From positions 186,001-250,000 of the IMG/VR virus record IMGVR_UViG_3300040801_001224: a stretch of 64,000 bases of DNA; one strand, written 5' to 3'. Below, in pieces: positions 16,143-58,808 of this stretch (its first letter is position 1; the number at the start of each line of letters is the position of its first letter). The position numbers and the translations under genes are program-made. A model generated the notes under the pieces. It was given only the letters and a program-made list of their open reading frames with translations. It was not told where the DNA came from and did no database searches.

Positions 16143-17072
16143 ATGAACAAGGTATGGTTCGATAAGTACAGGCCAGTTACTACTGAAGGTTATGTATTTA
16201 AAAATGATAATTTAAAATCACAAATTGCTACTTGGGTCAAAGAGCAAAACATTCCACACTTATTATTTTCAGGGCCAGCTGGCACAGGAAAGACAACACT
16301 AGCAAAAGTTATATTTAATGAGCTTGATGCTGATAAGGCAGACATTCTAGAAATTAACGCTTCTAGTGATAACGGTGTTGACTACATACGTGACACAACC
16401 ACAAACTTTGTAAGCACAATGTCATTCAGTGGTGGTATGCGTTACGTATTACTTGATGAGGCCGACTACTTGAGTCCAAATGCTCAAGCGGCATTGCGTG
16501 GTGTTATGGAACGGTTTATCAACACTTCACGTTTTATTCTAACGTGTAACTATCCAAGTAAAATTATTCCAGCTCTACATTCACGAGTACAGAGCATTAG
16601 TATTGATACCCTGGAGAAACCAGAGTTTGCTGGTAAGATGGCTGAAATTTTAATGTCTGAGGATGTTAAATTTGATGCTGATTCCCTGCAGACGTATATA
16701 GACGCTTACTACCCAGATATGCGTAAATGTATTAATGAGATGCAGTCAAACAGCTCATCTGGTGAACTGGTTATGCCAGACACAAGTACATCATCTAAAG
16801 ACTACATGCTAGAAATGGTTGCCTTATTCCGCAATAAGCAGTTTGAGCAAGCACGTAAGTTAGTCTGTAAGCAAGCGGCACCCGAAGAATATGAACAAAT
16901 ATTCCGTTTTTTATATGAGAACGTTGAGTTCTGGGGTGAGCAAGATCCAGTGAAAACCGGACAAGCAATTGTAACAATTAGAAATGGATTGGTAAATCAC
17001 ACATTAGTAGCAGACCCAGAGATCAATTTGGCCGCTTGTCTGTGTGACTTGGAATTAGTACAACAAGGATAA
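16143..17072 (+). CDS. Sliding-clamp loader AAA+ subunit (RFC small subunit / T4 gp44-like)
   Basis: WFDKYRP, SGPAGTGKTT, LEINASS, LLDEADYL, AQAALR, LHSRV. Confidence 0.95.
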   Translation: MNKVWFDKYRPVTTEGYVFKNDNLKSQIATWVKEQNIPHLLFSGPAGTGKTTLAKVIFNELDADKADILEINASSDNGVDYIRDTTTNFVSTMSFSGGMRYVLLDEADYLSPNAQAALRGVMERFINTSRFILTCNYPSKIIPALHSRVQSISIDTLEKPEFAGKMAEILMSEDVKFDADSLQTYIDAYYPDMRKCINEMQSNSSSGELVMPDTSTSSKDYMLEMVALFRNKQFEQARKLVCKQAAPEEYEQIFRFLYENVEFWGEQDPVKTGQAIVTIRNGLVNHTLVADPEINLAACLCDLELVQQG

Positions 17073-17677: not shown

Positions 17678-17706
17678 TTGACAAGGCCACTTTCTTGTGC
17701 TACAAT
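17678..17706 (+). promoter_or_regulatory. sigma70 promoter (CCACT class)
   Basis: TTGACA-aggCCACT...-TACAAT, 17-nt spacer. Confidence 0.8.
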
Positions 17707-17740
17707 GGTTCAATTGTTTATAAGGAAGGAACGATTATTT

Positions 17741-18847
17741 ATGTGTAAAGTATCTTTAAATTCAACTAGAAAATGTCGCAAGCATAAGGTGACCGGTGAA
17801 GTAATTGATCTGCCGGCTTGCGTTGTTTGTGGCAAAAAAGGCTCACCAATGACAGGCTGGGTTGAGTTAGATGATTCAGATTACCTTTACGCAAGATGGC
17901 GCCCAGTGAGCCAGAAAATTTCTGAAATGACTGGACACTCTACTGATGATTCTTGTTGCGAGAGTTGTAAGAGAAAGCTGAATAGGGAATGGCGTAGAGC
18001 TAATCCTGATGCCTATATCAATAGCATTGATGCAGAGCGTCACATTAAATTAAACGATTACGTTGGTGTTGAATTGACTATTGCTGAGTTTAACCACGTC
18101 ATGGCTCTGTCCAAAACGGGTGAGAAGGCTGCGGATCAATTCAAAGCAATGGTTGAATTGGGTATTGACTACAAAACGTTCAACAGTGTTGCAGAGTATA
18201 CATACTACACTCGTTATAATAACTACAACCCTGGCACAACTATTGAAGAGTTTCGTGAAATCCGCAAAGAAGGCATTAACTACGCTGAATTTGTGGAAAA
18301 AGAAAATAGCAAAATTATCGCATATATGCAACATGGTGATGAAACCAAATATATCGACTTCATCACAAAGAAGCCATTCCACGTAACTGATTACACCGAA
18401 GCAGGTAACGATCAGTTTAAGGAACTCCTTGGCTTCGATACTCTTGAAGAAAAGCCTGATCATCATCATTTTGTGATTTGTAAAAACATTTCTGTAACCA
18501 AAAACAACACAATGAATCCATCGGGTATTATGAAAACTGACATACTTGGTAATTCAGATTATTTTATTGAAATGATGGGTACTATTGCAATTGGCAAAAC
18601 CACCCACAAGCTCATGCATGGTGACAAACTTGGTGGCGATTTTGACATCAACGACATGATGGAATTGGGCATTGCTCCGTGGTGGGCACAGTGTAAAGAT
18701 AATTACGAAGCATTGCGATCTAAATACCCAGGTGTTATTGACCACATTGATTATGAAGAAATGATTGCTAGGCACACCCTATCTAACTACTTGGATGGCA
18801 CATACATGATGTCAGATAAAGCACAAGTAAGATTCCAATACATTTGA
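17741..18847 (+). CDS. Cys-rich protein with possible C-terminal HNH-like nuclease domain
   Basis: Start moved to ATG 17741 (SD AAGGA; the TTG start lies in the promoter); CxxC pairs; DHHHF...N...THKLMH. Confidence 0.45.
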   Translation: MCKVSLNSTRKCRKHKVTGEVIDLPACVVCGKKGSPMTGWVELDDSDYLYARWRPVSQKISEMTGHSTDDSCCESCKRKLNREWRRANPDAYINSIDAERHIKLNDYVGVELTIAEFNHVMALSKTGEKAADQFKAMVELGIDYKTFNSVAEYTYYTRYNNYNPGTTIEEFREIRKEGINYAEFVEKENSKIIAYMQHGDETKYIDFITKKPFHVTDYTEAGNDQFKELLGFDTLEEKPDHHHFVICKNISVTKNNTMNPSGIMKTDILGNSDYFIEMMGTIAIGKTTHKLMHGDKLGGDFDINDMMELGIAPWWAQCKDNYEALRSKYPGVIDHIDYEEMIARHTLSNYLDGTYMMSDKAQVRFQYI

Positions 18848-18902: not shown

Positions 18903-19502
18903 TTGGAAAAAATTATATTAGTTGACGTTGATGGTGTATTGCTCGACTGGAACGCAGGTTTCTGTAATTGGATGGATAAGCAAGGCTTTCCGTTCATCCC
19001 AGGTACTGAACATGAATACGCTATTGAAAAGCGTCACGAGAATGTTACATTCACACAGGCACGTAAATTGATAGAAGAATTTAACACTTCTGACGAACTG
19101 CGTACCCTACAACCCAATAAAGACTCACAAGAATTTGTTGCCAAACTTGTTGATGAAGGTTTCCGGTTTATTGCTGTTACTGCGGTATCCGATGATCCGG
19201 TTGCTGGCATTAACAGACGTTATAACTTGGAGCAGGTGTTTGGCGATATATTTGATGAGATCCACTGTACTCCATTAGGTGAATCCAAGCAGGTCATCCT
19301 ACGTGAAAACTGGGGTGGTACAGGTTTGATATGGATCGAGGATCACTTCAAAAATGCTGAAGCGGGTTACGAAGAAGGCCTACGTTCTGTACTGGTGGAC
19401 ACACCATATAACAGGCACTTCATGACCGATCTGTTCCCCAGAGTGGACGCTGAAAAACCCTGGGCAGATATCTATAAAATTGTACATGATCTGTACAGAT
19501 AA
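18903..19502 (+). CDS. HAD-superfamily hydrolase, 5'(3')-deoxyribonucleotidase-like
   Basis: LVDVDGVLLDW, IWIEDH. Confidence 0.85.
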   Translation: MEKIILVDVDGVLLDWNAGFCNWMDKQGFPFIPGTEHEYAIEKRHENVTFTQARKLIEEFNTSDELRTLQPNKDSQEFVAKLVDEGFRFIAVTAVSDDPVAGINRRYNLEQVFGDIFDEIHCTPLGESKQVILRENWGGTGLIWIEDHFKNAEAGYEEGLRSVLVDTPYNRHFMTDLFPRVDAEKPWADIYKIVHDLYR

Positions 19503-19510
19503 ATAAACAC

Positions 19511-19582
19511 GTTGCTAGGGTGTGAACACTGGCTACCAGGTCTAATATCCTGTTCCGCCCTTGGAATCGCCCTAGCACACCA
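19511..19582 (+). ncRNA. Candidate 72-nt structured RNA ending in ACCA (tRNA-like, non-canonical)
   Basis: Starts 5 nt after TAAATA(19500-19505); closing stem TGCTAGGGTG/CGCCCTAGCA; internal hairpins; 3' CCA at 19580-19582; no canonical T or D loops. Confidence 0.35.
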
Positions 19583-19599
19583 AAAAATAAATCCCCTTT

Positions 19600-19621
19600 T
19601 AGTGTGAACTAGTTCACACTA
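19600..19621. promoter_or_regulatory. Perfect 22-bp palindrome matching the CRP box (TGTGA-N6-TCACA)
   Basis: TAGTGTGAACTAGTTCACACTA, centred about 60 bp upstream of the predicted +1. Confidence 0.65.
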
Positions 19622-19634
19622 TTACCTCAGAACG

Positions 19635-19663
19635 TTGACAATACCACTTTTTTCCAGTATAAT
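19635..19663 (+). promoter_or_regulatory. sigma70 promoter (CCACT class)
   Basis: TTGACA-ataCCACT...-TATAAT, 17-nt spacer. Confidence 0.85.
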
Positions 19664-19717
19664 GTATATAAATAGAGATATACATTTAAACTTAATTAAT
19701 CCGTAGGAGGATGAGTC

Positions 19718-21670
19718 ATGAAAACATCAATTTTTAAGAGTTTATTGATACTGACCACGTTGGTGATCCCACTGGTCGTTAACCCTTTATATGCCCACGG
19801 CAACAAGGGCAATAAGGGAAAGAACAAAGGCCAACAATGTTCTTATACAATTCAACAGGGTAACAAAGGTGAGAACTGCGTAGTAGTCACACCAGGTGCT
19901 ACAACTTTTGAAACTACAAGTAAAGGTGTGGTGGTATTCACTGATTTCACTATTAGTGAGCCAGTCAAGAAAACACTAAACACAATGTACAGCTTCGACA
20001 TTGACTTTGCTCAAGACAACAAAGTGTGTAATAAATTAGAAGCACAGATTGAAAAGCGTCCAGTTGGGCGATTTAAGGCAAAGAAGAAAAGTAAAGGTCT
20101 TGAATTCACGTCTAAAAAGATTTTTAAGAATAAAAGATTTTCTAAATGTGACATCACAGCAATAAGCGTCAAAGTTTTCAAAATCAATAAAGGCAACTTA
20201 GGCACTGCTAATACTACCCCAACAACTCCTCCGCCAGCACCTGAAATGTGTGAATGGAATGAAGCTATTGAAGCCACTGATCCTGCTTGCCAGGAACCAC
20301 CACGCTGTGAGTGGAACAGTGACATCTACGCTGATGACTCTTCATGTGTTGAACCACCACGCTGTGAGTGGAATCAGGATATTTATGCTGATGATCAGAA
20401 TTGTGTAGAGCCAGTTACATACGTTTCAAAGGCAGAGCAGATCGCAAACTTACGTCAAATCGTTTATACTAAAGCCTCTGAGCTTGGCTTAAACACTAGT
20501 GGCACACGTTTTGTGGGTCTTGACATTGGTAACGATGGCGATCAAGACATCCTGGCGATCTACGCATTCCACTGGGATGGTCAGGAAGGTCCTGCGGTAC
20601 TGTATATCAACGACACTACATCAGAGAACGGTTGGATTGAGCAAGACATCAACCTTAACACTAACTCTGGATACCGTTCAGCAGTAGTAGGTGACTTCAC
20701 TGGCGATGGTCAAGACGATGTGTTCATCTATAATGGTGCTGGATATAACGTTATGTTAACTCAGATGAATGGTAGCTTGTACAATAACGGTTACATTCCA
20801 GAAGAAGATGGCACAAGCACATATACTAAAGGTTATCAGAAGCACATGGTTAAGCACTCAGCGGCTGACTTTGATGGTGACGGCGATTTAGATGTATTTG
20901 TTGTAGCACAGAACGATTTCGACCAGTACAGAGCAGACAGCCACATTTGGTACATTAATGATGGCAATGGCAACTTTACGCCAGAGTACAGAACTGACCG
21001 CACACAACGTGGCATCTGGTACAACTACGTACTGTCTAGCGCAATCGCTGACTTTGACCGTGACGGCACTTTAGACGTGTATTTAGGTACTGCCAACAAT
21101 GACAATGGTTCCACAAACTATGGTTTAGGCAACCAGATGTTTGGTAACGTTGACGCACTGATTTGCTCAAAAGGTGGCAAGTATAAGAAGTTGATCTCAC
21201 GTACTACTAACCATGGTGTGTCAAGTTCTTCAGCAGAGCATATTGATGTTGTTGCTGACGATGTGAATGGTGACGGCAACCCTGACATTATTGCGCTGAA
21301 CTTTGATACTACTACTAAAGGCAACTCACGTGTAGAGATTAAACTTGGTAATGGTGATGGTACTTTTGAAACAGCTCAAGTACTGTGGAATAGTACACGT
21401 GGTGATGCTCGCATTGGCTATGAAGATGTTAACGGCGATGGCCTAAAGGATATTGTAACAATCCCACAGAGCCAGGCTTACACATACCGTAACTTAACAA
21501 ACGCAGGTACTTCTTATGTACTTAATAACACTAAGAGTACCGTCTACATTAACCAGGGTAATGGTCAATTTGTAGAAGATATGGGCGTAACTATTGACAA
21601 GGTTAGCATATTAACAGCAATGTTCTTTGTAACCGACAATAATGCTTACAACCCAATTGAACTCCATTAA
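19718..21670 (+). CDS. Secreted FG-GAP/VCBS-repeat (Ca-binding beta-propeller) protein
   Basis: Signal peptide (..PLYA); three CEWN..I.A.D..C.EP repeats; at least 6 DxxGDGxxD-type motifs. Confidence 0.85.
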   Translation: MKTSIFKSLLILTTLVIPLVVNPLYAHGNKGNKGKNKGQQCSYTIQQGNKGENCVVVTPGATTFETTSKGVVVFTDFTISEPVKKTLNTMYSFDIDFAQDNKVCNKLEAQIEKRPVGRFKAKKKSKGLEFTSKKIFKNKRFSKCDITAISVKVFKINKGNLGTANTTPTTPPPAPEMCEWNEAIEATDPACQEPPRCEWNSDIYADDSSCVEPPRCEWNQDIYADDQNCVEPVTYVSKAEQIANLRQIVYTKASELGLNTSGTRFVGLDIGNDGDQDILAIYAFHWDGQEGPAVLYINDTTSENGWIEQDINLNTNSGYRSAVVGDFTGDGQDDVFIYNGAGYNVMLTQMNGSLYNNGYIPEEDGTSTYTKGYQKHMVKHSAADFDGDGDLDVFVVAQNDFDQYRADSHIWYINDGNGNFTPEYRTDRTQRGIWYNYVLSSAIADFDRDGTLDVYLGTANNDNGSTNYGLGNQMFGNVDALICSKGGKYKKLISRTTNHGVSSSSAEHIDVVADDVNGDGNPDIIALNFDTTTKGNSRVEIKLGNGDGTFETAQVLWNSTRGDARIGYEDVNGDGLKDIVTIPQSQAYTYRNLTNAGTSYVLNNTKSTVYINQGNGQFVEDMGVTIDKVSILTAMFFVTDNNAYNPIELH

Positions 21671-43548: not shown

Positions 43549-44370
43549 TTACAGTATCATAAATTCAAAGTTAAAGCCTGCTTTTTTGCAGGCTTTTTCT
43601 TTTGCTAAGTTTTTTTCTAAATCTGCTTGGAAAGTATATTTTGATTTTACTTCGATGATGAGATTTTCCTTTGGAATGTAGAAGTCCGGGTAATAGCGTT
43701 TTGTTTGGCCATTTATTTCATACCATATGTCGGGCGTTTCATTATCCTTATATACGATGTCTTTTTCAGAAAATTTTTCTAATAGAATATCCAATGCTTG
43801 GCATTCATATCCCTGCACGTCAATCTTATTCCCAGACGGAAGAATATATTCTTTGAACTTGTACATCTTGTGCTTTATCTTTTCGTATAGTTCTTTATTC
43901 TGCATGTGATTCTCTACACCATATTTTTTCAAACACGTCTTCTTTTTCTTTTCTTTAATTTTTTCTGAGATATTGGGGTTATCAACACCATATTTAGTTT
44001 TCCATGTTTCTTTTCTTTTCGCATTGAGTTCAGGAACCTGGCCGGTGTGTTTGTATCCATATTTTTCTAAATTACTTGCTATTGTCGCTTCTTTTATTTC
44101 GTCTGATTGTTGAGGATATTCAACACCATATTTTTGTAGATTAGTGTCTTTTATTTTATTCTGAACACCCTTATTGCCTAATGGAGAAATTGAACCATAT
44201 TTCTTTAGACATGTTTTTTCACGCTGTTCTTTTCCGTTAATGTAAGATAGCTTGCCGGCACAGGATCTTGAACATGCCTTTTTGTATTTATTGTTCCATT
44301 TGTCCCATTCTACAAGATTAGAACAATCGGGATTCGCACATTCGGGTGGGTTGTTGCGGTAAATATTCAT
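43549..44370 (-). CDS. Free-standing homing-endonuclease-like gene (KYGxxN repeats plus PD-(D/E)xK domain)
   Basis: N-terminal CxxxxC, repeated KKYGV(E/D)(N/Y), C-terminal YYPDFYIPKENLIIEVKS; AT-rich, antisense; late box at 44432-44439. Confidence 0.8.
   Translation of the reverse strand: MNIYRNNPPECANPDCSNLVEWDKWNNKYKKACSRSCAGKLSYINGKEQREKTCLKKYGSISPLGNKGVQNKIKDTNLQKYGVEYPQQSDEIKEATIASNLEKYGYKHTGQVPELNAKRKETWKTKYGVDNPNISEKIKEKKKKTCLKKYGVENHMQNKELYEKIKHKMYKFKEYILPSGNKIDVQGYECQALDILLEKFSEKDIVYKDNETPDIWYEINGQTKRYYPDFYIPKENLIIEVKSKYTFQADLEKNLAKEKACKKAGFNFEFMIL
43573..43599. terminator. Bidirectional terminator
   Basis: AAAGCCTGC-ttttt-TGCAGGCTTTTT. Confidence 0.8.
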
Positions 44371-44557
44371 AGCTGATACTCCTTTCCAGTATTAGAGTAG
44401 TCAGATGTTGGCGCATCGTGGACTACACTTCTATTTATCATTATTGAACCCATTGTCTGAGCAAAGTTGATTTTAGGCCCTTTTCTTTTTGTCTGACATT
44501 TCTGATATATTAGAAAATTATGGTAAATAAGAGTAACAAGCCCAAGAGGAACAAATC

Positions 44558-45768: not shown

Positions 45769-45801
45769 GATTTCACATTCACAAACAAGATAAATATTAT
45801 T

Positions 45802-46299
45802 ATGCGTGTAGAAGAAGTTAAAGATGATGATACATACAAGATTAAGTATACTAAATTGGACTATGGCGATTTCTGTGACATGTTTGGAGAAAATGTTGCT
45901 ATACACGTATACGCAGAATATATAATATCAGAGTGCAATCTTTTGGAGAGTAATAGCGAAGAATCTATTGCTGAATTTGATTCACTCGAAGGCGAGAAGC
46001 CAGTTGTCGGAAATATCTATTATGGTTTACACATTGGATTAACCAATGGAAAAATACAACCCCTAGGTAATTTTAAAGGAAAAGTGGATAGTGTAATCTC
46101 CAATCCATTTGGTGATACATATATTATAGAACTTAAGGACGGCACCAAGGCCCCCTATCCACAATATGATACACAAGAAATCTTAAAATCAAAAGTTTTG
46201 CTATCATCGTCCAAGGAAGATCATGAATCAGAGATGATGTCTATGAAATTAAAATTCGGTATAGATTTTGACGCAATAAGAGAGCAAATGGTAGTCTAA
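45802..46299 (+). CDS. Late hypothetical protein (leaderless; MRVEEV)
   Basis: ATG 5 nt after TAAATA(45791-45796). Confidence 0.7.
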   Translation: MRVEEVKDDDTYKIKYTKLDYGDFCDMFGENVAIHVYAEYIISECNLLESNSEESIAEFDSLEGEKPVVGNIYYGLHIGLTNGKIQPLGNFKGKVDSVISNPFGDTYIIELKDGTKAPYPQYDTQEILKSKVLLSSSKEDHESEMMSMKLKFGIDFDAIREQMVV

Positions 46300-58042: not shown

Positions 58043-58151
58043 GTAGTTTACCTATTAATTCTAGTTCGCTATCATTGTTATTTATCTTTTTTTAGGTTAT
58101 AATTAAATCAATATTGAACAGACATAGAGTATACTCCAGATAAATAACAGT

Positions 58152-58808
58152 ATGAAGAGGTATATAGGAAAAATAACACCATTCGCATATGCGGCATTTG
58201 CGGCAATTGTTTCAATGTGGCTATTGGCAATGTTCATGTCTATTTCTCAAGAAATTCAGTTGTCAATTACATTATTAATATCCTTCCTCATCGGTTTAAT
58301 GGCTTTCAACATAGCAGGAGCTATAGATGCCAGAAGTTATAAAAAAATGACTCGTGATCCAGAATCCGGAGCTCGGACAAGGCAATATTTCATTGATATA
58401 TCAGAACGTGAAATATCAAGGAGCATAAGAAGCCAGACACCAATTTATGCGATTGCGTTTAAGTTGGACCAATACGAAGAAATTCATAGTGAAGCTCCCA
58501 AATGTATTGCTACTATCTTTGAGCAGATGACTATACATTTAAGAAAAAATACACGAAAAAATGATGTCCTAGCTAGACTAAGTGATAATGCCTTTGTACT
58601 ATTGCTGTCAGACGACACTAAAGAAGAACATACCGGAATGCTTGCTGAACGAGTTCAGAATACTGTGAACTCACTAATGTGTACCGCAAATAATAAAACA
58701 TACCAAAATCTAACAGCCACTACATTCGTTGAACCATATGATATGGATAACGACATGAGCTCTGAAGACTTTACAACTCGCCTAGAAAACATCTTAGAAA
58801 ACGCTTGA
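58152..58808 (+). CDS. Two-TM membrane protein with degenerate GGDEF domain
   Basis: DPESGARTRQYF, RKND-x5-SDNAF (intact I-site, dead A-site); leaderless after TAAATA at 58141. Confidence 0.8.
   Translation: MKRYIGKITPFAYAAFAAIVSMWLLAMFMSISQEIQLSITLLISFLIGLMAFNIAGAIDARSYKKMTRDPESGARTRQYFIDISEREISRSIRSQTPIYAIAFKLDQYEEIHSEAPKCIATIFEQMTIHLRKNTRKNDVLARLSDNAFVLLLSDDTKEEHTGMLAERVQNTVNSLMCTANNKTYQNLTATTFVEPYDMDNDMSSEDFTTRLENILENA

What the first reader, a model, noticed from the sequence alone, without database searches (positions are those of the whole stretch)
19498..19590. Late-transcribed 72-nt tRNA-sized RNA ending in ACCA
Seen: GATAAATA (19498-19505) with no downstream ORF or SD. The sixth base after the box (G19511, the offset of the leaderless late ATGs) begins a sequence closed by a 10-bp stem (TGCTAGGGTG/CGCCCTAGCA) with a CACCA 3' tail. 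It has internal hairpin options (CTGG-CTA-CCAG, CAGG-TCTAATAT-CCTG, TTCC-GCCCTT-GGAA) and lacks canonical D- and T-loop sequences. Inference: a tRNA mimic, e.g. a decoy for anticodon nucleases, an aminoacylated non-ribosomal donor, or a substrate of the phage TGT-fold enzyme.
Basis: partly seen in the sequence, partly recalled or inferred. Interest (0 to 1): 0.6.

Follow-up and report, generated by a model that had tools for sequence, protein, structure and literature searches.

The report
Phage small RNA mimicking tRNA's acceptor arm
Behind a late-type promoter, a 328-kb uncultured phage and its closest relatives carry a conserved ~72-79-nt hairpin RNA that ends like a tRNA (a long helix plus a single-stranded NCCA tail) but has no cloverleaf and no anticodon; it matches no described RNA family and is probably a new kind of tRNA-end mimic.

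Summary
The GATAAATA box (19498-19505), the 10-bp closing stem, the CACCA tail and the lack of an ORF or SD are all there.

The box is a genuine promoter-like signal. Of 99 copies in the genome, 82 sit just upstream of ORFs, and 17 have ATG exactly at the leaderless offset.

The element recurs downstream of the same nucleotidase gene in five other metagenomic phage lineages (53-81% protein identity). Its sequence has diverged there, but its structure is kept:
- 93.6% of cells are paired, against 33-43% when partners are slid.
- 18 of 25 pairs carry double-sided changes.
- 0 of 500 shuffles reach the observed values.

It is not a cloverleaf. It is an irregular rod made of an 11-12-bp closing helix (10 bp in L028), an invariant UGGCU/CGCC core, a variable apical hairpin and a 4-nt NCCA tail. 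In relatives the apical loop is only a UUCG-type tetraloop.

ARAGORN and Rfam do not recognise it, and it is single-copy in the genome.

Best reading: a stand-alone small RNA that imitates the acceptor/T arm ("minihelix") of tRNA and works through its NCCA end. The anticodon-nuclease decoy and TGT-substrate ideas are disfavoured. Expression and function remain untested because no RNA data exist. It is a new variant of the tRNA-mimic theme and moderately to highly interesting.

The parts
18903..19502 (+). Upstream gene: HAD-superfamily 5'-nucleotidase (NT5C-like), 199 aa. It is the synteny anchor of the element.
   Evidence: Pfam PF06941 (28.4 bits) and phrog_420. Homologues were used to fetch related loci.
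19498..19505 (+). GATAAATA box, a T4-like late-type promoter element that overlaps the stop codon of the nucleotidase gene.
   Evidence: Enriched 18 vs 4.1 in the window. 82 of 99 genomic copies precede ORFs, and 17 are leaderless at offset 5. Annotated genes behind boxes are virion structural proteins and homing endonucleases. The box is kept 5-6 nt before the helix in all six homologues plus the truncated L010 lineage; L028 has GATAAACA.
19511..19582 (+). The 72-nt RNA element, from the inferred start G19511 to the A of the ACCA tail.
   Evidence: Folds at -28.8 kcal/mol, z = -3.9. Covariance models built from relatives find it: R1, built without the window sequence, scores 24.3 bits (E 0.0023); R2 scores 47.9 bits.
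19511..19522 (+). P1 5' arm. 19513-19522 pairs with 19568-19577. In the model alignment G19511-C19578 and U19512-A19577 also pair, with U19513 bulged, which gives 11 bp.
   Evidence: 10 of the 12 P1 pairs show double-sided changes across homologues.
19568..19578 (+). P1 3' arm.
19527..19528 (+). P1b 5' side (CA), pairing with 19562-19563 (UG). This is a short helix above a 4x4 purine-rich internal loop.
   Evidence: MFE fold. Both pairs covary in homologues (helix 2).
19530..19534 (+). Invariant UGGCU. Its GGC (19531-19533) can pair with GCC (19557-19559).
   Evidence: Invariant in all six homologues, and UGGCU is also kept in the truncated L010.
19556..19559 (+). Invariant CGCC, the partner of the GGC above.
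   Evidence: GC, GC and CG in 6 of 6.
19537..19552 (+). P2 apical hairpin: CAGG / 8-nt loop / CCUG. Length and loop vary among relatives.
   Evidence: Single-sequence folds. 6 of the 8 model pairs carry double-sided changes. Loops are UUCG or CCCG in L030, L031 and L090.
19579..19582 (+). Single-stranded ACCA tail, directly after P1.
   Evidence: ACCA in the window, L028, L030 and L031; UCCA in L090; ACCU in L009. The bases that follow are not conserved. The phage's own tRNA genes likewise encode NCCA followed by an A/T-rich trailer.
19601..19620 (.). Perfect 20-nt palindrome between the element and the next gene's promoter. Terminator-like in relatives (A-run, stem, T-run), with a weak T-run here.
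   Evidence: Unique in the genome. In L030 it stays with the FG-GAP gene, not with the element.
19635..19674 (+). The downstream gene's own promoters: TTGACA-17-TATAAT and a TATAAATA box.
   Evidence: An ATAAATA box at the same place in relatives.
19718..21670 (+). Downstream gene: 650-aa protein with FG-GAP repeats and a hydrophobic N-terminus.
   Evidence: Pfam PF13517 and PF01839. The syntenic FG-GAP/Calx-beta genes in L009, L028 and L030.

Best explanation
This is a dedicated, single-copy gene for a small non-coding RNA of about 72 nt (75-79 nt in relatives). It is carried by one clade of T4-like jumbo phages.

Proposed steps:
1. Transcription starts at, or one base before, the first nucleotide of the closing helix, five to six bases after a GATAAATA late-type promoter box. 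The RNA therefore needs no 5' processing.
2. The RNA folds into one irregular hairpin. Its parts are an 11-12-bp helix formed by its two ends (10 bp in L028), a purine-rich internal loop, a short helix, an invariant UGGCU/CGCC core, and a variable apical hairpin that serves only as a cap.
3. The helix is followed by a 4-nt single-stranded NCCA. Helix length plus overhang reproduce the coaxial acceptor/T-stem arm of tRNA (7 + 5 bp plus discriminator-CCA), the so-called 'minihelix'. I infer that the 3' end is trimmed back to CCA by the host's tRNA 3'-maturation nucleases. This would match the phage's 26 tRNA genes, nearly all of which also encode CCA followed by an A/U-rich trailer.
4. The RNA then acts in trans through this acceptor-like end and its conserved core. 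It would be a mimic that occupies, or is modified by, a factor that reads tRNA 3' ends.

My preferred version is a late-expressed competitor or decoy for host enzymes that attack or inspect the CCA end, such as CCA-pyrophosphorylating toxSAS, nucleotidyltransferase toxins or acetyltransferase toxins.

Shown: conservation, structure, strand, promoter-box geometry, the tRNA-like end, and the absence of cloverleaf and anticodon.
Inferred: start site, late timing, the 3' end at CCA, and trans action.
Speculative: the decoy role.
For: Structure is conserved while sequence diverges:
- Six distinct homologues sit behind the same gene.
- Each folds on its own into the same architecture.
- A covariance model built only from L030, L090 and L031 retrieves the window's copy (24.3 bits, E 0.0023) and L009.
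- On the six-sequence alignment, 93.6% of cells pair, against 33-43% with slid partners. 18 of 25 pairs have double-sided changes. 0 of 500 shuffles reach the observed values (the five-sequence version is).
- A structure-blind MAFFT/RNAalifold run still recovers P1, with 5 compensated pairs.

Strand: G-U pairs (three in a row in L090) pair only in the plus-strand RNA. The plus strand folds better in 5 of 6 homologues.

Promoter:
- Box statistics, and virion genes behind boxes.
- Box-to-helix spacing is fixed at 5-6 nt in every lineage, even where the stop codon has moved (L028, L031).
- The downstream genes have their own promoters. L030 and L090 have a second GATAAATA only 4-5 nt after NCCA. 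The FG-GAP gene has its own sigma70-type and ATAAATA boxes. The first box is therefore not needed for them.
- In L028 and L031 a terminator-like hairpin with a T-run follows NCCA after 5-8 nt, which gives a complete small transcription unit.

tRNA-like end:
- CCA at a fixed place after P1 in 5 of 6 homologues, with unconserved bases after it.
- The first two pairs (G-C, U-A) and the A before CCA are kept in 5 of 6, while the rest of P1 covaries.
- The genome's own tRNA genes follow the same NCCA-plus-A/T-trailer convention.

Exceptional stability: it is the most stable of all 99 box-proximal stretches, so it is not a generic late 5' leader.

Literature context: hairpin models of the acceptor/T arm are recognised by RNase P (PMC11143913). 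A tRNA minihelix is a substrate of the antiphage toxSAS FaRel2, which reads the acceptor stem (doi 10.1101/2024.07.05.602228).
Against: - There is no expression evidence. Only DNA runs hold this phage, so the start, the end and even the existence of a discrete RNA are unproven.
- Only six homologues exist, all from one narrow clade. The alignment used for pair counts was fitted to the model.
- One close lineage (L010, L011, L012; three samples) keeps only the 5' half within the available sequence. The RNA may therefore be dispensable.
- L009 has ACCU instead of ACCA. L028 has a 10-bp helix and a 5-nt overhang.
- The window's own terminator-like hairpin lacks a good U-run, so 3'-end formation is unexplained here.
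- No partner was found. The genome has no CCA-adding enzyme, Ro/TROVE, RtcB or TGT by Pfam.
- The helix is continuous rather than a 7 + 5 stack with a T-loop, so the mimicry is geometric, not sequence-based.
- Nothing links it specifically to any defence system.
Confidence: 0.45

Rival explanations
1. A cis-acting RNA processing or stability element rather than a trans-acting RNA. It could be a tRNA-like 'punctuation' mark cut by RNase P, or a T7-style RNase III site, at the end of the early nucleotidase message. Alternatively it could be a 5'-terminal or 3'-terminal protective hairpin for neighbouring mRNAs.
For: - It lies in an intergenic region at the 3' end of an early-type gene.
- Its outline (lower stem, internal loop, upper stem) resembles phage RNase III sites, by my own knowledge of T7.
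- G1-C72 and a purine-CCA tail are RNase P determinants, and RNase P cuts hairpin substrates and some mRNAs (PMC11143913). tRNA-like t-elements define mRNA ends in plant mitochondria (PMC1920247).
- A hairpin that begins at +1 would protect a late transcript's 5' end.
Against: - The invariant UGGCU/CGCC core and the conserved first two pairs are not needed for a protective hairpin.
- The upper part is too interrupted, and too variable in length (P2 has 4-8 bp), for a two-turn RNase III substrate.
- The downstream genes have their own promoters directly after the element, so it is not their obligatory leader.
- Other late transcripts of this phage do not start with such hairpins.
- There is no U-run for a terminator.
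Confidence: 0.25
2. An aminoacylated carrier: the NCCA end is charged by a synthetase, and the amino acid is used outside normal decoding.
For: - The acceptor-like helix with NCCA, a conserved G1-C72, U2-A71 and an A at the discriminator place suggest a sequence-specific reader of the end.
- Some synthetases charge minihelices (general knowledge; PMC2377443 for LeuRS).
Against: - The known minihelix identity marks are absent: no G3-U70 wobble at a fixed place, and no G-1 with C73.
- There is no anticodon.
- The P1 sequence matches none of the 26 phage tRNA acceptor stems.
- L009 ends in CCU.
- I did not search the genome for an aminoacyl-tRNA-dependent transferase.
Confidence: 0.08
3. A cis-acting antiterminator RNA in the manner of HK022 put. 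The nascent structure would modify the polymerase that made it, so that late transcripts from this promoter read through the terminator-like palindrome into the next genes.
For: - The element sits immediately after a promoter and, in L028 and L031, immediately before a terminator-like hairpin.
- It is about the size of put RNA, by my own knowledge.
Against: - This does not explain the conserved NCCA or the helix length.
- In L030 and L090 no terminator follows, only a second promoter.
- In the window the palindrome has no U-run.
- No precedent is known to me in T4-type late transcription.
Confidence: 0.05
4. A decoy for anticodon nucleases, or a substrate of a tRNA-guanine transglycosylase-fold enzyme. 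These were the reader's first and third ideas.
For: The phage carries 26 tRNAs and a tmRNA, so tRNA-directed conflicts are plausible for it.
Against: - The apical loop is not conserved in length or sequence, and in four of five relatives it is a 4-nt cap (UUCG, CCCG, AUCU). There is no 7-nt anticodon-like loop and no UGU.
- PF01702 finds no TGT in the genome.
Confidence: 0.02
5. No function: a chance hairpin or a decaying remnant.
For: One close lineage has only the 5' half. Most nucleotidase loci with 55% identity or less lack the element.
Against: Compensatory changes across six lineages, invariant core motifs, and fixed promoter spacing and tail.
Confidence: 0.03

Closest known systems
tRNA acceptor/T-arm 'minihelix' (12-bp coaxial stack plus discriminator-CCA)
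   Same: An 11-12-bp helix formed with the 3' strand running straight into a 4-nt single-stranded NCCA. G1-C72 and an A at the discriminator place. The CCA is gene-encoded and followed by an A/U-rich trailer, as in this phage's tRNA genes.
   Different: The 5' strand is continuous, with no break between acceptor and T stem. There is no T-loop. A roughly 45-nt conserved irregular hairpin sits where the T-loop would be. It is a natural gene with its own promoter, not a fragment of a tRNA.
Hairpin-type natural RNase P substrates: E. coli 4.5S RNA precursor, phage phi80 M3 RNA, P1/P7 C4 antisense RNA (listed in PMC11143913)
   Same: Small or hairpin-shaped non-tRNA RNAs, some phage-encoded, whose terminal helix plus 3' tail is read like a tRNA acceptor end.
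   Different: Those RNAs need RNase P to make their 5' end, whereas here the promoter box places the start at the helix itself. There is no sequence or Rfam similarity. Cleavage was not tested.
Bacterial and phage Y RNAs (YrlA) and other tRNA mimics (mascRNA, plant-virus tRNA-like structures; PMC4201824, PMC8457004, PMC7749636)
   Same: Non-coding RNAs that copy part of tRNA architecture in order to recruit tRNA-handling proteins.
   Different: Those mimics keep T-loop/D-loop elbow features or pseudoknotted acceptor arms, and YrlA works with Ro60. This element has no T- or D-loop sequences, and the genome has no TROVE protein. It copies only the acceptor end.
T4 stable RNAs of unknown function (species 1 and 2, rnaC/rnaD) in the tRNA gene cluster (from my own knowledge; not retrieved here)
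   Same: Phage-encoded small stable RNAs that are processed like tRNAs but do not decode.
   Different: The T4 RNAs are longer and lie inside the tRNA cluster. This element lies about 56 kb from the tRNA cluster, next to a replication-module gene. No sequence comparison was possible.
T7-type RNase III processing sites
   Same: An intergenic irregular hairpin with a lower stem, an internal loop and an upper stem, often just after a promoter.
   Different: This element has a conserved NCCA tail, an invariant core, a much-interrupted upper part and a variable length.

Membership tests
Canonical tRNA (Rfam RF00005; ARAGORN model) | Cloverleaf with D arm, anticodon arm with a 7-nt loop, and a T arm with a T-loop | tested here: not met
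   ARAGORN finds nothing at the site although it finds 26 tRNAs elsewhere in the genome. There is no RF00005 match even at E up to 10. Comparative structure is a single rod.
Canonical tRNA | Acceptor helix formed by the 5' and 3' ends, followed by a 4-nt NCCA | tested here: met
   NCCA in 5 of 6 homologues, and the helix is kept by covariation.
tRNA acceptor/T-arm minihelix mimic | About 12 bp between the NCCA end and the distal element | tested here: met
   12 bp in L030, L031 and L090. 11 bp plus a bulged U in the window and L009. 10 bp in L028.
tRNA acceptor/T-arm minihelix mimic | T-loop (UUCRANY) closing the helix | tested here: not met
   No conserved T-loop-like sequence. UUGGAAUC in the window and L009 is not kept in L030, L031 or L090.
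tmRNA tRNA-like domain | Acceptor plus T arm joined to a tag reading frame; recognised by ARAGORN or Rfam | tested here: not met
   The phage's tmRNA is elsewhere, at genome 124149-124495. There is no match at the element.
Y RNA / YrlA | Ro60 (TROVE) partner gene and a Ro-binding stem with a tRNA-like T/D module | tested here: not met
   PF05731 is absent from the genome although the controls ring. There is no Rfam hit.
T4-type late promoter | A (T/G)ATAAATA box with the start about 6 nt downstream, in front of late (virion) genes | tested here: met
   Enrichment, position before ORFs and the leaderless offset. Virion structural genes lie behind boxes. Timing and the start site themselves cannot be tested with these tools.
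Intrinsic terminator | A G+C-rich hairpin with a short loop, followed directly by a U-run | tested here: not met
   The scan reports no terminator at the element. The tail is ACCA followed by an A-run.
Hairpin-type RNase P substrate | G(+1)-C72 and a purine-CCA 3' tail on a helix of at least 7-12 bp; cleavage by RNase P | tested here: inconclusive
   The sequence features are present in 4-5 of 6 homologues. Cleavage cannot be tested here, and the promoter geometry suggests no leader to remove.
RNase III site (T7-like) | About two turns of near-continuous dsRNA around one internal loop | tested here: inconclusive
   The lower stem fits. The upper part is broken by three loops and varies from 9 to 13 bp. 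No enzyme test was possible.
Any described RNA family (Rfam 15) | A match at or near the gathering score | tested here: not met
   0 matches at gathering score in the window and seven related loci. Only irrelevant weak hits at E-value threshold.

The most novel reading that the evidence does not exclude
A new class of phage small RNA: a minimal, promoter-to-CCA encoded mimic of the tRNA acceptor arm. It would be made in quantity late in infection, and its NCCA end would be the working part. It could soak up or divert host factors that attack or inspect tRNA 3' ends (toxSAS such as CapRel or FaRel2, MenT/AbiEii-type nucleotidyltransferases, GNAT toxins, RelA). Alternatively it could itself be charged or modified. 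The invariant UGGCU/CGCC core would be the docking site for a specific partner, or a T-box-like UGGN pairing site for tRNA 3' ends. This would be an RNA-based counter-defence aimed at the acceptor end rather than the anticodon.
Probability: 0.25. Interest if true: 0.85.

Novelty: new variant of a known kind. Interest (0 to 1): 0.62.

Why it matters
Phages are known to bring whole tRNAs to escape anticodon-directed defences. I found no description of a phage RNA that copies only the acceptor end. Several recently described antiphage toxins act precisely on the tRNA CCA end and read the acceptor stem, so a natural minihelix mimic would be an obvious but undescribed counter-move.

Independently of function, this is a compact (about 75 nt) new structured RNA with clear covariation. 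It has an invariant internal-loop core that must bind something, and a transcription unit that runs from the promoter box to CCA. It is therefore easy to synthesise and test in vitro.

The element also shows that this phage clade uses a GATAAATA late box with many leaderless genes. That helps annotation of a poorly known group of jumbo phages.

Tried and rejected
- Close relatives in public phage records: none by megablast or blastn.
- IMG/VR scans gave only chance or coding matches, or a distant locus without the element: the exact stem pattern, the conserved 5' block, the palindrome, the core pattern and the nucleotidase protein (L003).
- The core pattern in 185,579 prokaryote genomes gave 44 matches. 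None is a real homologue by the model; the best is 17 bits and lacks P1.
- The JGI metagenome scan with the nucleotidase alignment gave 53 loci. Apart from L037 (the same contig as L030), they lack the element.
- Paralogues: model R2 over the whole 328-kb genome (window plus 14 fetched pieces) and about 50 related loci found only the five sequences it was built from. The genome search with R1 on the own genome returned nothing, but its first-look filter also missed the known copy, so that result is uninformative.
- A small ORF over the element was rejected. The 52-aa minus-strand ORF and a 31-codon plus-strand TTG frame are not kept in relatives; L009 has an early stop.
- Cloverleaf folding was rejected.
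- Partner enzymes: PF01743, PF05731, PF01139 and PF01702 are all absent from the genome.
- RNA evidence: no RNA run holds the phage. Laying the three DNA runs only confirmed the sequence.
- Literature searches for a described equivalent found none. Two literature calls failed on a term-length slip.
No alternative genetic code was used. No protein-complex prediction was run.
Full report
**1. What the window is**

The window is bases 186001-250000 of a 328,096-bp virus record with direct terminal repeats. The record comes from a microbial-mat metagenome.

It is a T4-like jumbo phage. A gp44-type clamp loader lies at 16143-17072. The genome holds 26 tRNA genes and a tmRNA, all outside the window. 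No close relative exists in public phage records.

**2.

All stated features are present:
- The GATAAATA box is at 19498-19505. It overlaps the TAA stop of a HAD/NT5C-type 5'-nucleotidase gene (18903-19502).
- The 10-bp stem pairs 19513-19522 with 19568-19577 and includes one U-G pair.
- The stem is followed by C-ACCA, ending at 19582.
- G19511 to A19582 is 72 nt.

The next ORF (19718) has its own promoters and SD: a perfect sigma70-type promoter (19635-19663), a TATAAATA box (19667) and an AGGAGG SD.

The fold is far better than shuffles (z = -3.9). It is the most stable of all 99 stretches that follow a GATAAATA box in this genome.

Short contigs from public DNA runs reproduce the region exactly.

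**3. The box is a real promoter-type signal**

- GATAAATA occurs 18 times in the window, against 4.1 expected.
- Genome-wide, 82 of 99 boxes are followed within 100 nt by an ATG opening an ORF of at least 50 codons (control 32%).
- In 17 boxes the A of ATG is exactly the sixth base after the box (control 0.5%).
- Genes behind boxes that can be named are virion structural proteins and homing endonucleases.

This fits a T4-like late promoter. The timing itself is an inference from T4 biology.

**4. Relatives**

Homologues of the nucleotidase led to contigs with the same gene order: clamp loader, small ORF, nucleotidase, intergenic region, FG-GAP protein.

The element is present in:
- L009 (81% protein identity)
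- L028, identical to L029
- L030, identical to L037
- L031
- L090

Coordinates from +1 to NCCA are listed.

A sixth lineage (L010, L011, L012; three samples) has the box and the 5' half. It then runs into T-rich tandem repeats, with no 3' half within 267 nt.

More distant nucleotidase loci lack the element.

**5. Structure**

Each of the six sequences folds by itself into the same architecture:
- P1: closing helix of 10-12 bp.
- An internal loop.
- P1b: a short helix.
- A GGC/GCC helix set inside the invariant UGGCU and CGCC.
- P2: an apical hairpin of 4-8 bp.
- A 4-5-nt 3' overhang.

Independent support comes from several tests:
- A covariance model built only from L030, L090 and L031 found the window's copy (24.3 bits, E 0.0023) and L009 among 265 kb.
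- On the six-sequence model alignment, 93.6% of cells pair, against 33-43% when the partners are slid. 18 of 25 pairs have changes on both sides. No shuffle out of 500 reaches the observed values. This alignment was fitted to the model, which favours the structure.
- The single-sequence folds and a structure-blind MAFFT/RNAalifold run (P1 recovered with five compensated pairs) do not share that bias.

G-U pairs, three of them consecutive in L090, make sense only for plus-strand RNA. The plus strand folds better in five of six homologues.

**6. What is conserved and what is not**

Free to vary, with compensation:
- most of P1
- P1b
- P2

Not conserved:
- the apical loop (8 nt here, 5 nt in L009, UUCG/CCCG/AUCU elsewhere)
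- the purine-rich loop above P1
- everything after the tail

Conserved:
- the box and its 5-6-nt distance to P1
- the first two P1 pairs (G-C, U-A) in five of six
- UGGCU and CGCC in all six
- the CA...UG base of P2
- the tail: ACCA four times, UCCA once, ACCU once

In the model alignment the 5'-most transcribed base pairs with the base just before the tail. The overhang is therefore exactly four bases, as in tRNA.

The phage's own tRNA genes almost all encode NCCA followed by an A/T-rich trailer. Two of them are followed by a late box within 6-8 nt. L030 and L090 show the same layout after the element.

**7. What it is not**

- Not a tRNA or tmRNA.
- Not a member of any Rfam family, whether in the window or in seven related loci.
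- Not an intrinsic terminator: no U-run follows the stem.
- Not coding: candidate frames are not kept.
- Not repeated: it is a single copy in the whole genome.
- Not found in prokaryote genomes or other IMG/VR contigs by pattern plus model.
- Not the obligatory leader of the next gene, because that gene has its own promoters in every lineage.

**8. Interpretation**

The simplest reading of the anatomy is a stand-alone small-RNA gene. A late box places the start at the base of P1. The RNA is one bent or straight rod. Its end reproduces the acceptor/T arm of tRNA: 11-12 bp (10 bp in L028) plus NCCA.

I infer that the host's tRNA 3'-end nucleases trim it to CCA. In L028 and L031 a terminator-like hairpin with a T-run closes the unit 5-8 nt downstream.

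The apical loop is a mere cap, so the working parts must be the acceptor-like end and the invariant core. No Pfam TGT is found in the genome either.

Charging cannot be excluded, but the known minihelix identity marks are absent.

My preferred mechanism is mimicry of the tRNA 3' end towards a factor that reads it. One plausible case is competition with tRNAs for CCA-end-directed antiphage toxins. Those toxins accept minihelices and read the acceptor stem (doi 10.1101/2024.07.05.602228). This last step is speculation.

The main rival is a cis-acting processing or stability element: RNase P punctuation, an RNase III site or a terminal protective hairpin. It explains the helix and, for RNase P, the purine-CCA tail. 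It does not explain the invariant core or the dedicated promoter.

**9. Comparison with known systems**

The element works like a tRNA minihelix at its end. It resembles the hairpin-type non-tRNA substrates of RNase P: 4.5S RNA, phi80 M3 RNA and P1/P7 C4 RNA (PMC11143913).

It belongs with the broader set of tRNA mimics such as YrlA, mascRNA and viral TLS (PMC4201824, PMC8457004, PMC7749636). It fails the defining tests of each family, as the membership table shows.

The phage lacks a CCA-adding enzyme, Ro and RtcB.

**10. Verdict**

This is a real, conserved, previously undescribed structured RNA. It is a new variant of the tRNA-mimic theme, restricted so far to one clade of uncultured jumbo phages.

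Expression, exact ends and function are untested.

Confidence:
- about 0.9 that it is a selected RNA structure
- about 0.45 for the stand-alone acceptor-arm mimic acting through its NCCA end
- about 0.25 for the anti-defence or CCA-modification version

Interest: 0.62.

Noticed in passing
window 19601-19620: A perfect 20-nt palindrome (AGTGTGAAC TA GTTCACACT) lies just upstream of the sigma70-type promoter of the FG-GAP gene. It is almost invariant in relatives whose neighbouring protein is only 53-81% identical. L031 differs by 2 uncompensated bases. In relatives it is flanked by an A-run and a T-run, like a bidirectional terminator. It is unique in the genome. This sequence-level conservation suggests a protein-binding site as well as, or instead of, a terminator. 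In L030 it travels with the FG-GAP gene, not with the RNA element.
   Followed up: partly
window 19635-19674 and 19718-21670: The 650-aa FG-GAP-repeat protein has a hydrophobic N-terminus, and its relatives carry Calx-beta. It has both a perfect sigma70-type promoter and a TATAAATA late-type box, and the pair is conserved in relatives. It also has a sub-threshold Pfam hit to TcdB_toxin_midN (15.8 bits against a 24.8-bit cut-off), which I regard as repeat-level similarity only.
   Followed up: partly
window 44370-44446 (minus strand); also genome 125164 and 15113 (minus strand): Three GATAAATA boxes are followed by a similar ~60-nt leader (TGTAGTCC...GACTACTCTAATA, a 6-bp hairpin). The copy in the window is the leader of a homing-endonuclease gene (43552-44370). 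This recalls the hairpin-controlled late expression of T4 intron endonucleases.
   Followed up: partly
genome G000 124149-124495 and 261544-290925 (outside the window): The phage encodes a permuted (two-piece type) tmRNA with the tag ENDEIFALAA, and 26 tRNAs. Nearly all the tRNA genes have a gene-encoded CCA. One ARAGORN call (266270-266347) has a four-base anticodon (tttg).
   Followed up: no
genome-wide, e.g. window 45789-45804 and 58139-58154: 17 of the 99 GATAAATA boxes have ATG exactly 5 nt after the box. Many late genes of this phage are therefore predicted to be leaderless.
   Followed up: yes
L038:3100-3350, L059:3050-3330, L063:960-1240, L068:1890-2170 (identical to L070): In more distant relatives the nucleotidase gene is followed by a different long non-coding stretch. 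It has shared motifs (GGCGCGCC-like, CACCUGAAA...GGUG, GCUUCU..GGUUGU) and no Rfam match. This is possibly another unrecognised structured RNA at the same genomic position.
   Followed up: partly
L010:1381-1647 (also L011 and L012): In the lineage with 73% nucleotidase identity, the element's 5' half is followed by a UUCG hairpin and then degenerate tandem repeats of a T-rich 13-mer (TTTTTTGGATAGA) up to the contig end. The same junction is seen in three samples.
   Followed up: partly
window 17678-18847: A 389-aa ORF lies between the clamp-loader module and the nucleotidase gene. It has no Pfam or PHROG match, and it is absent from the syntenic relatives L009, L028 and L030.
   Followed up: no
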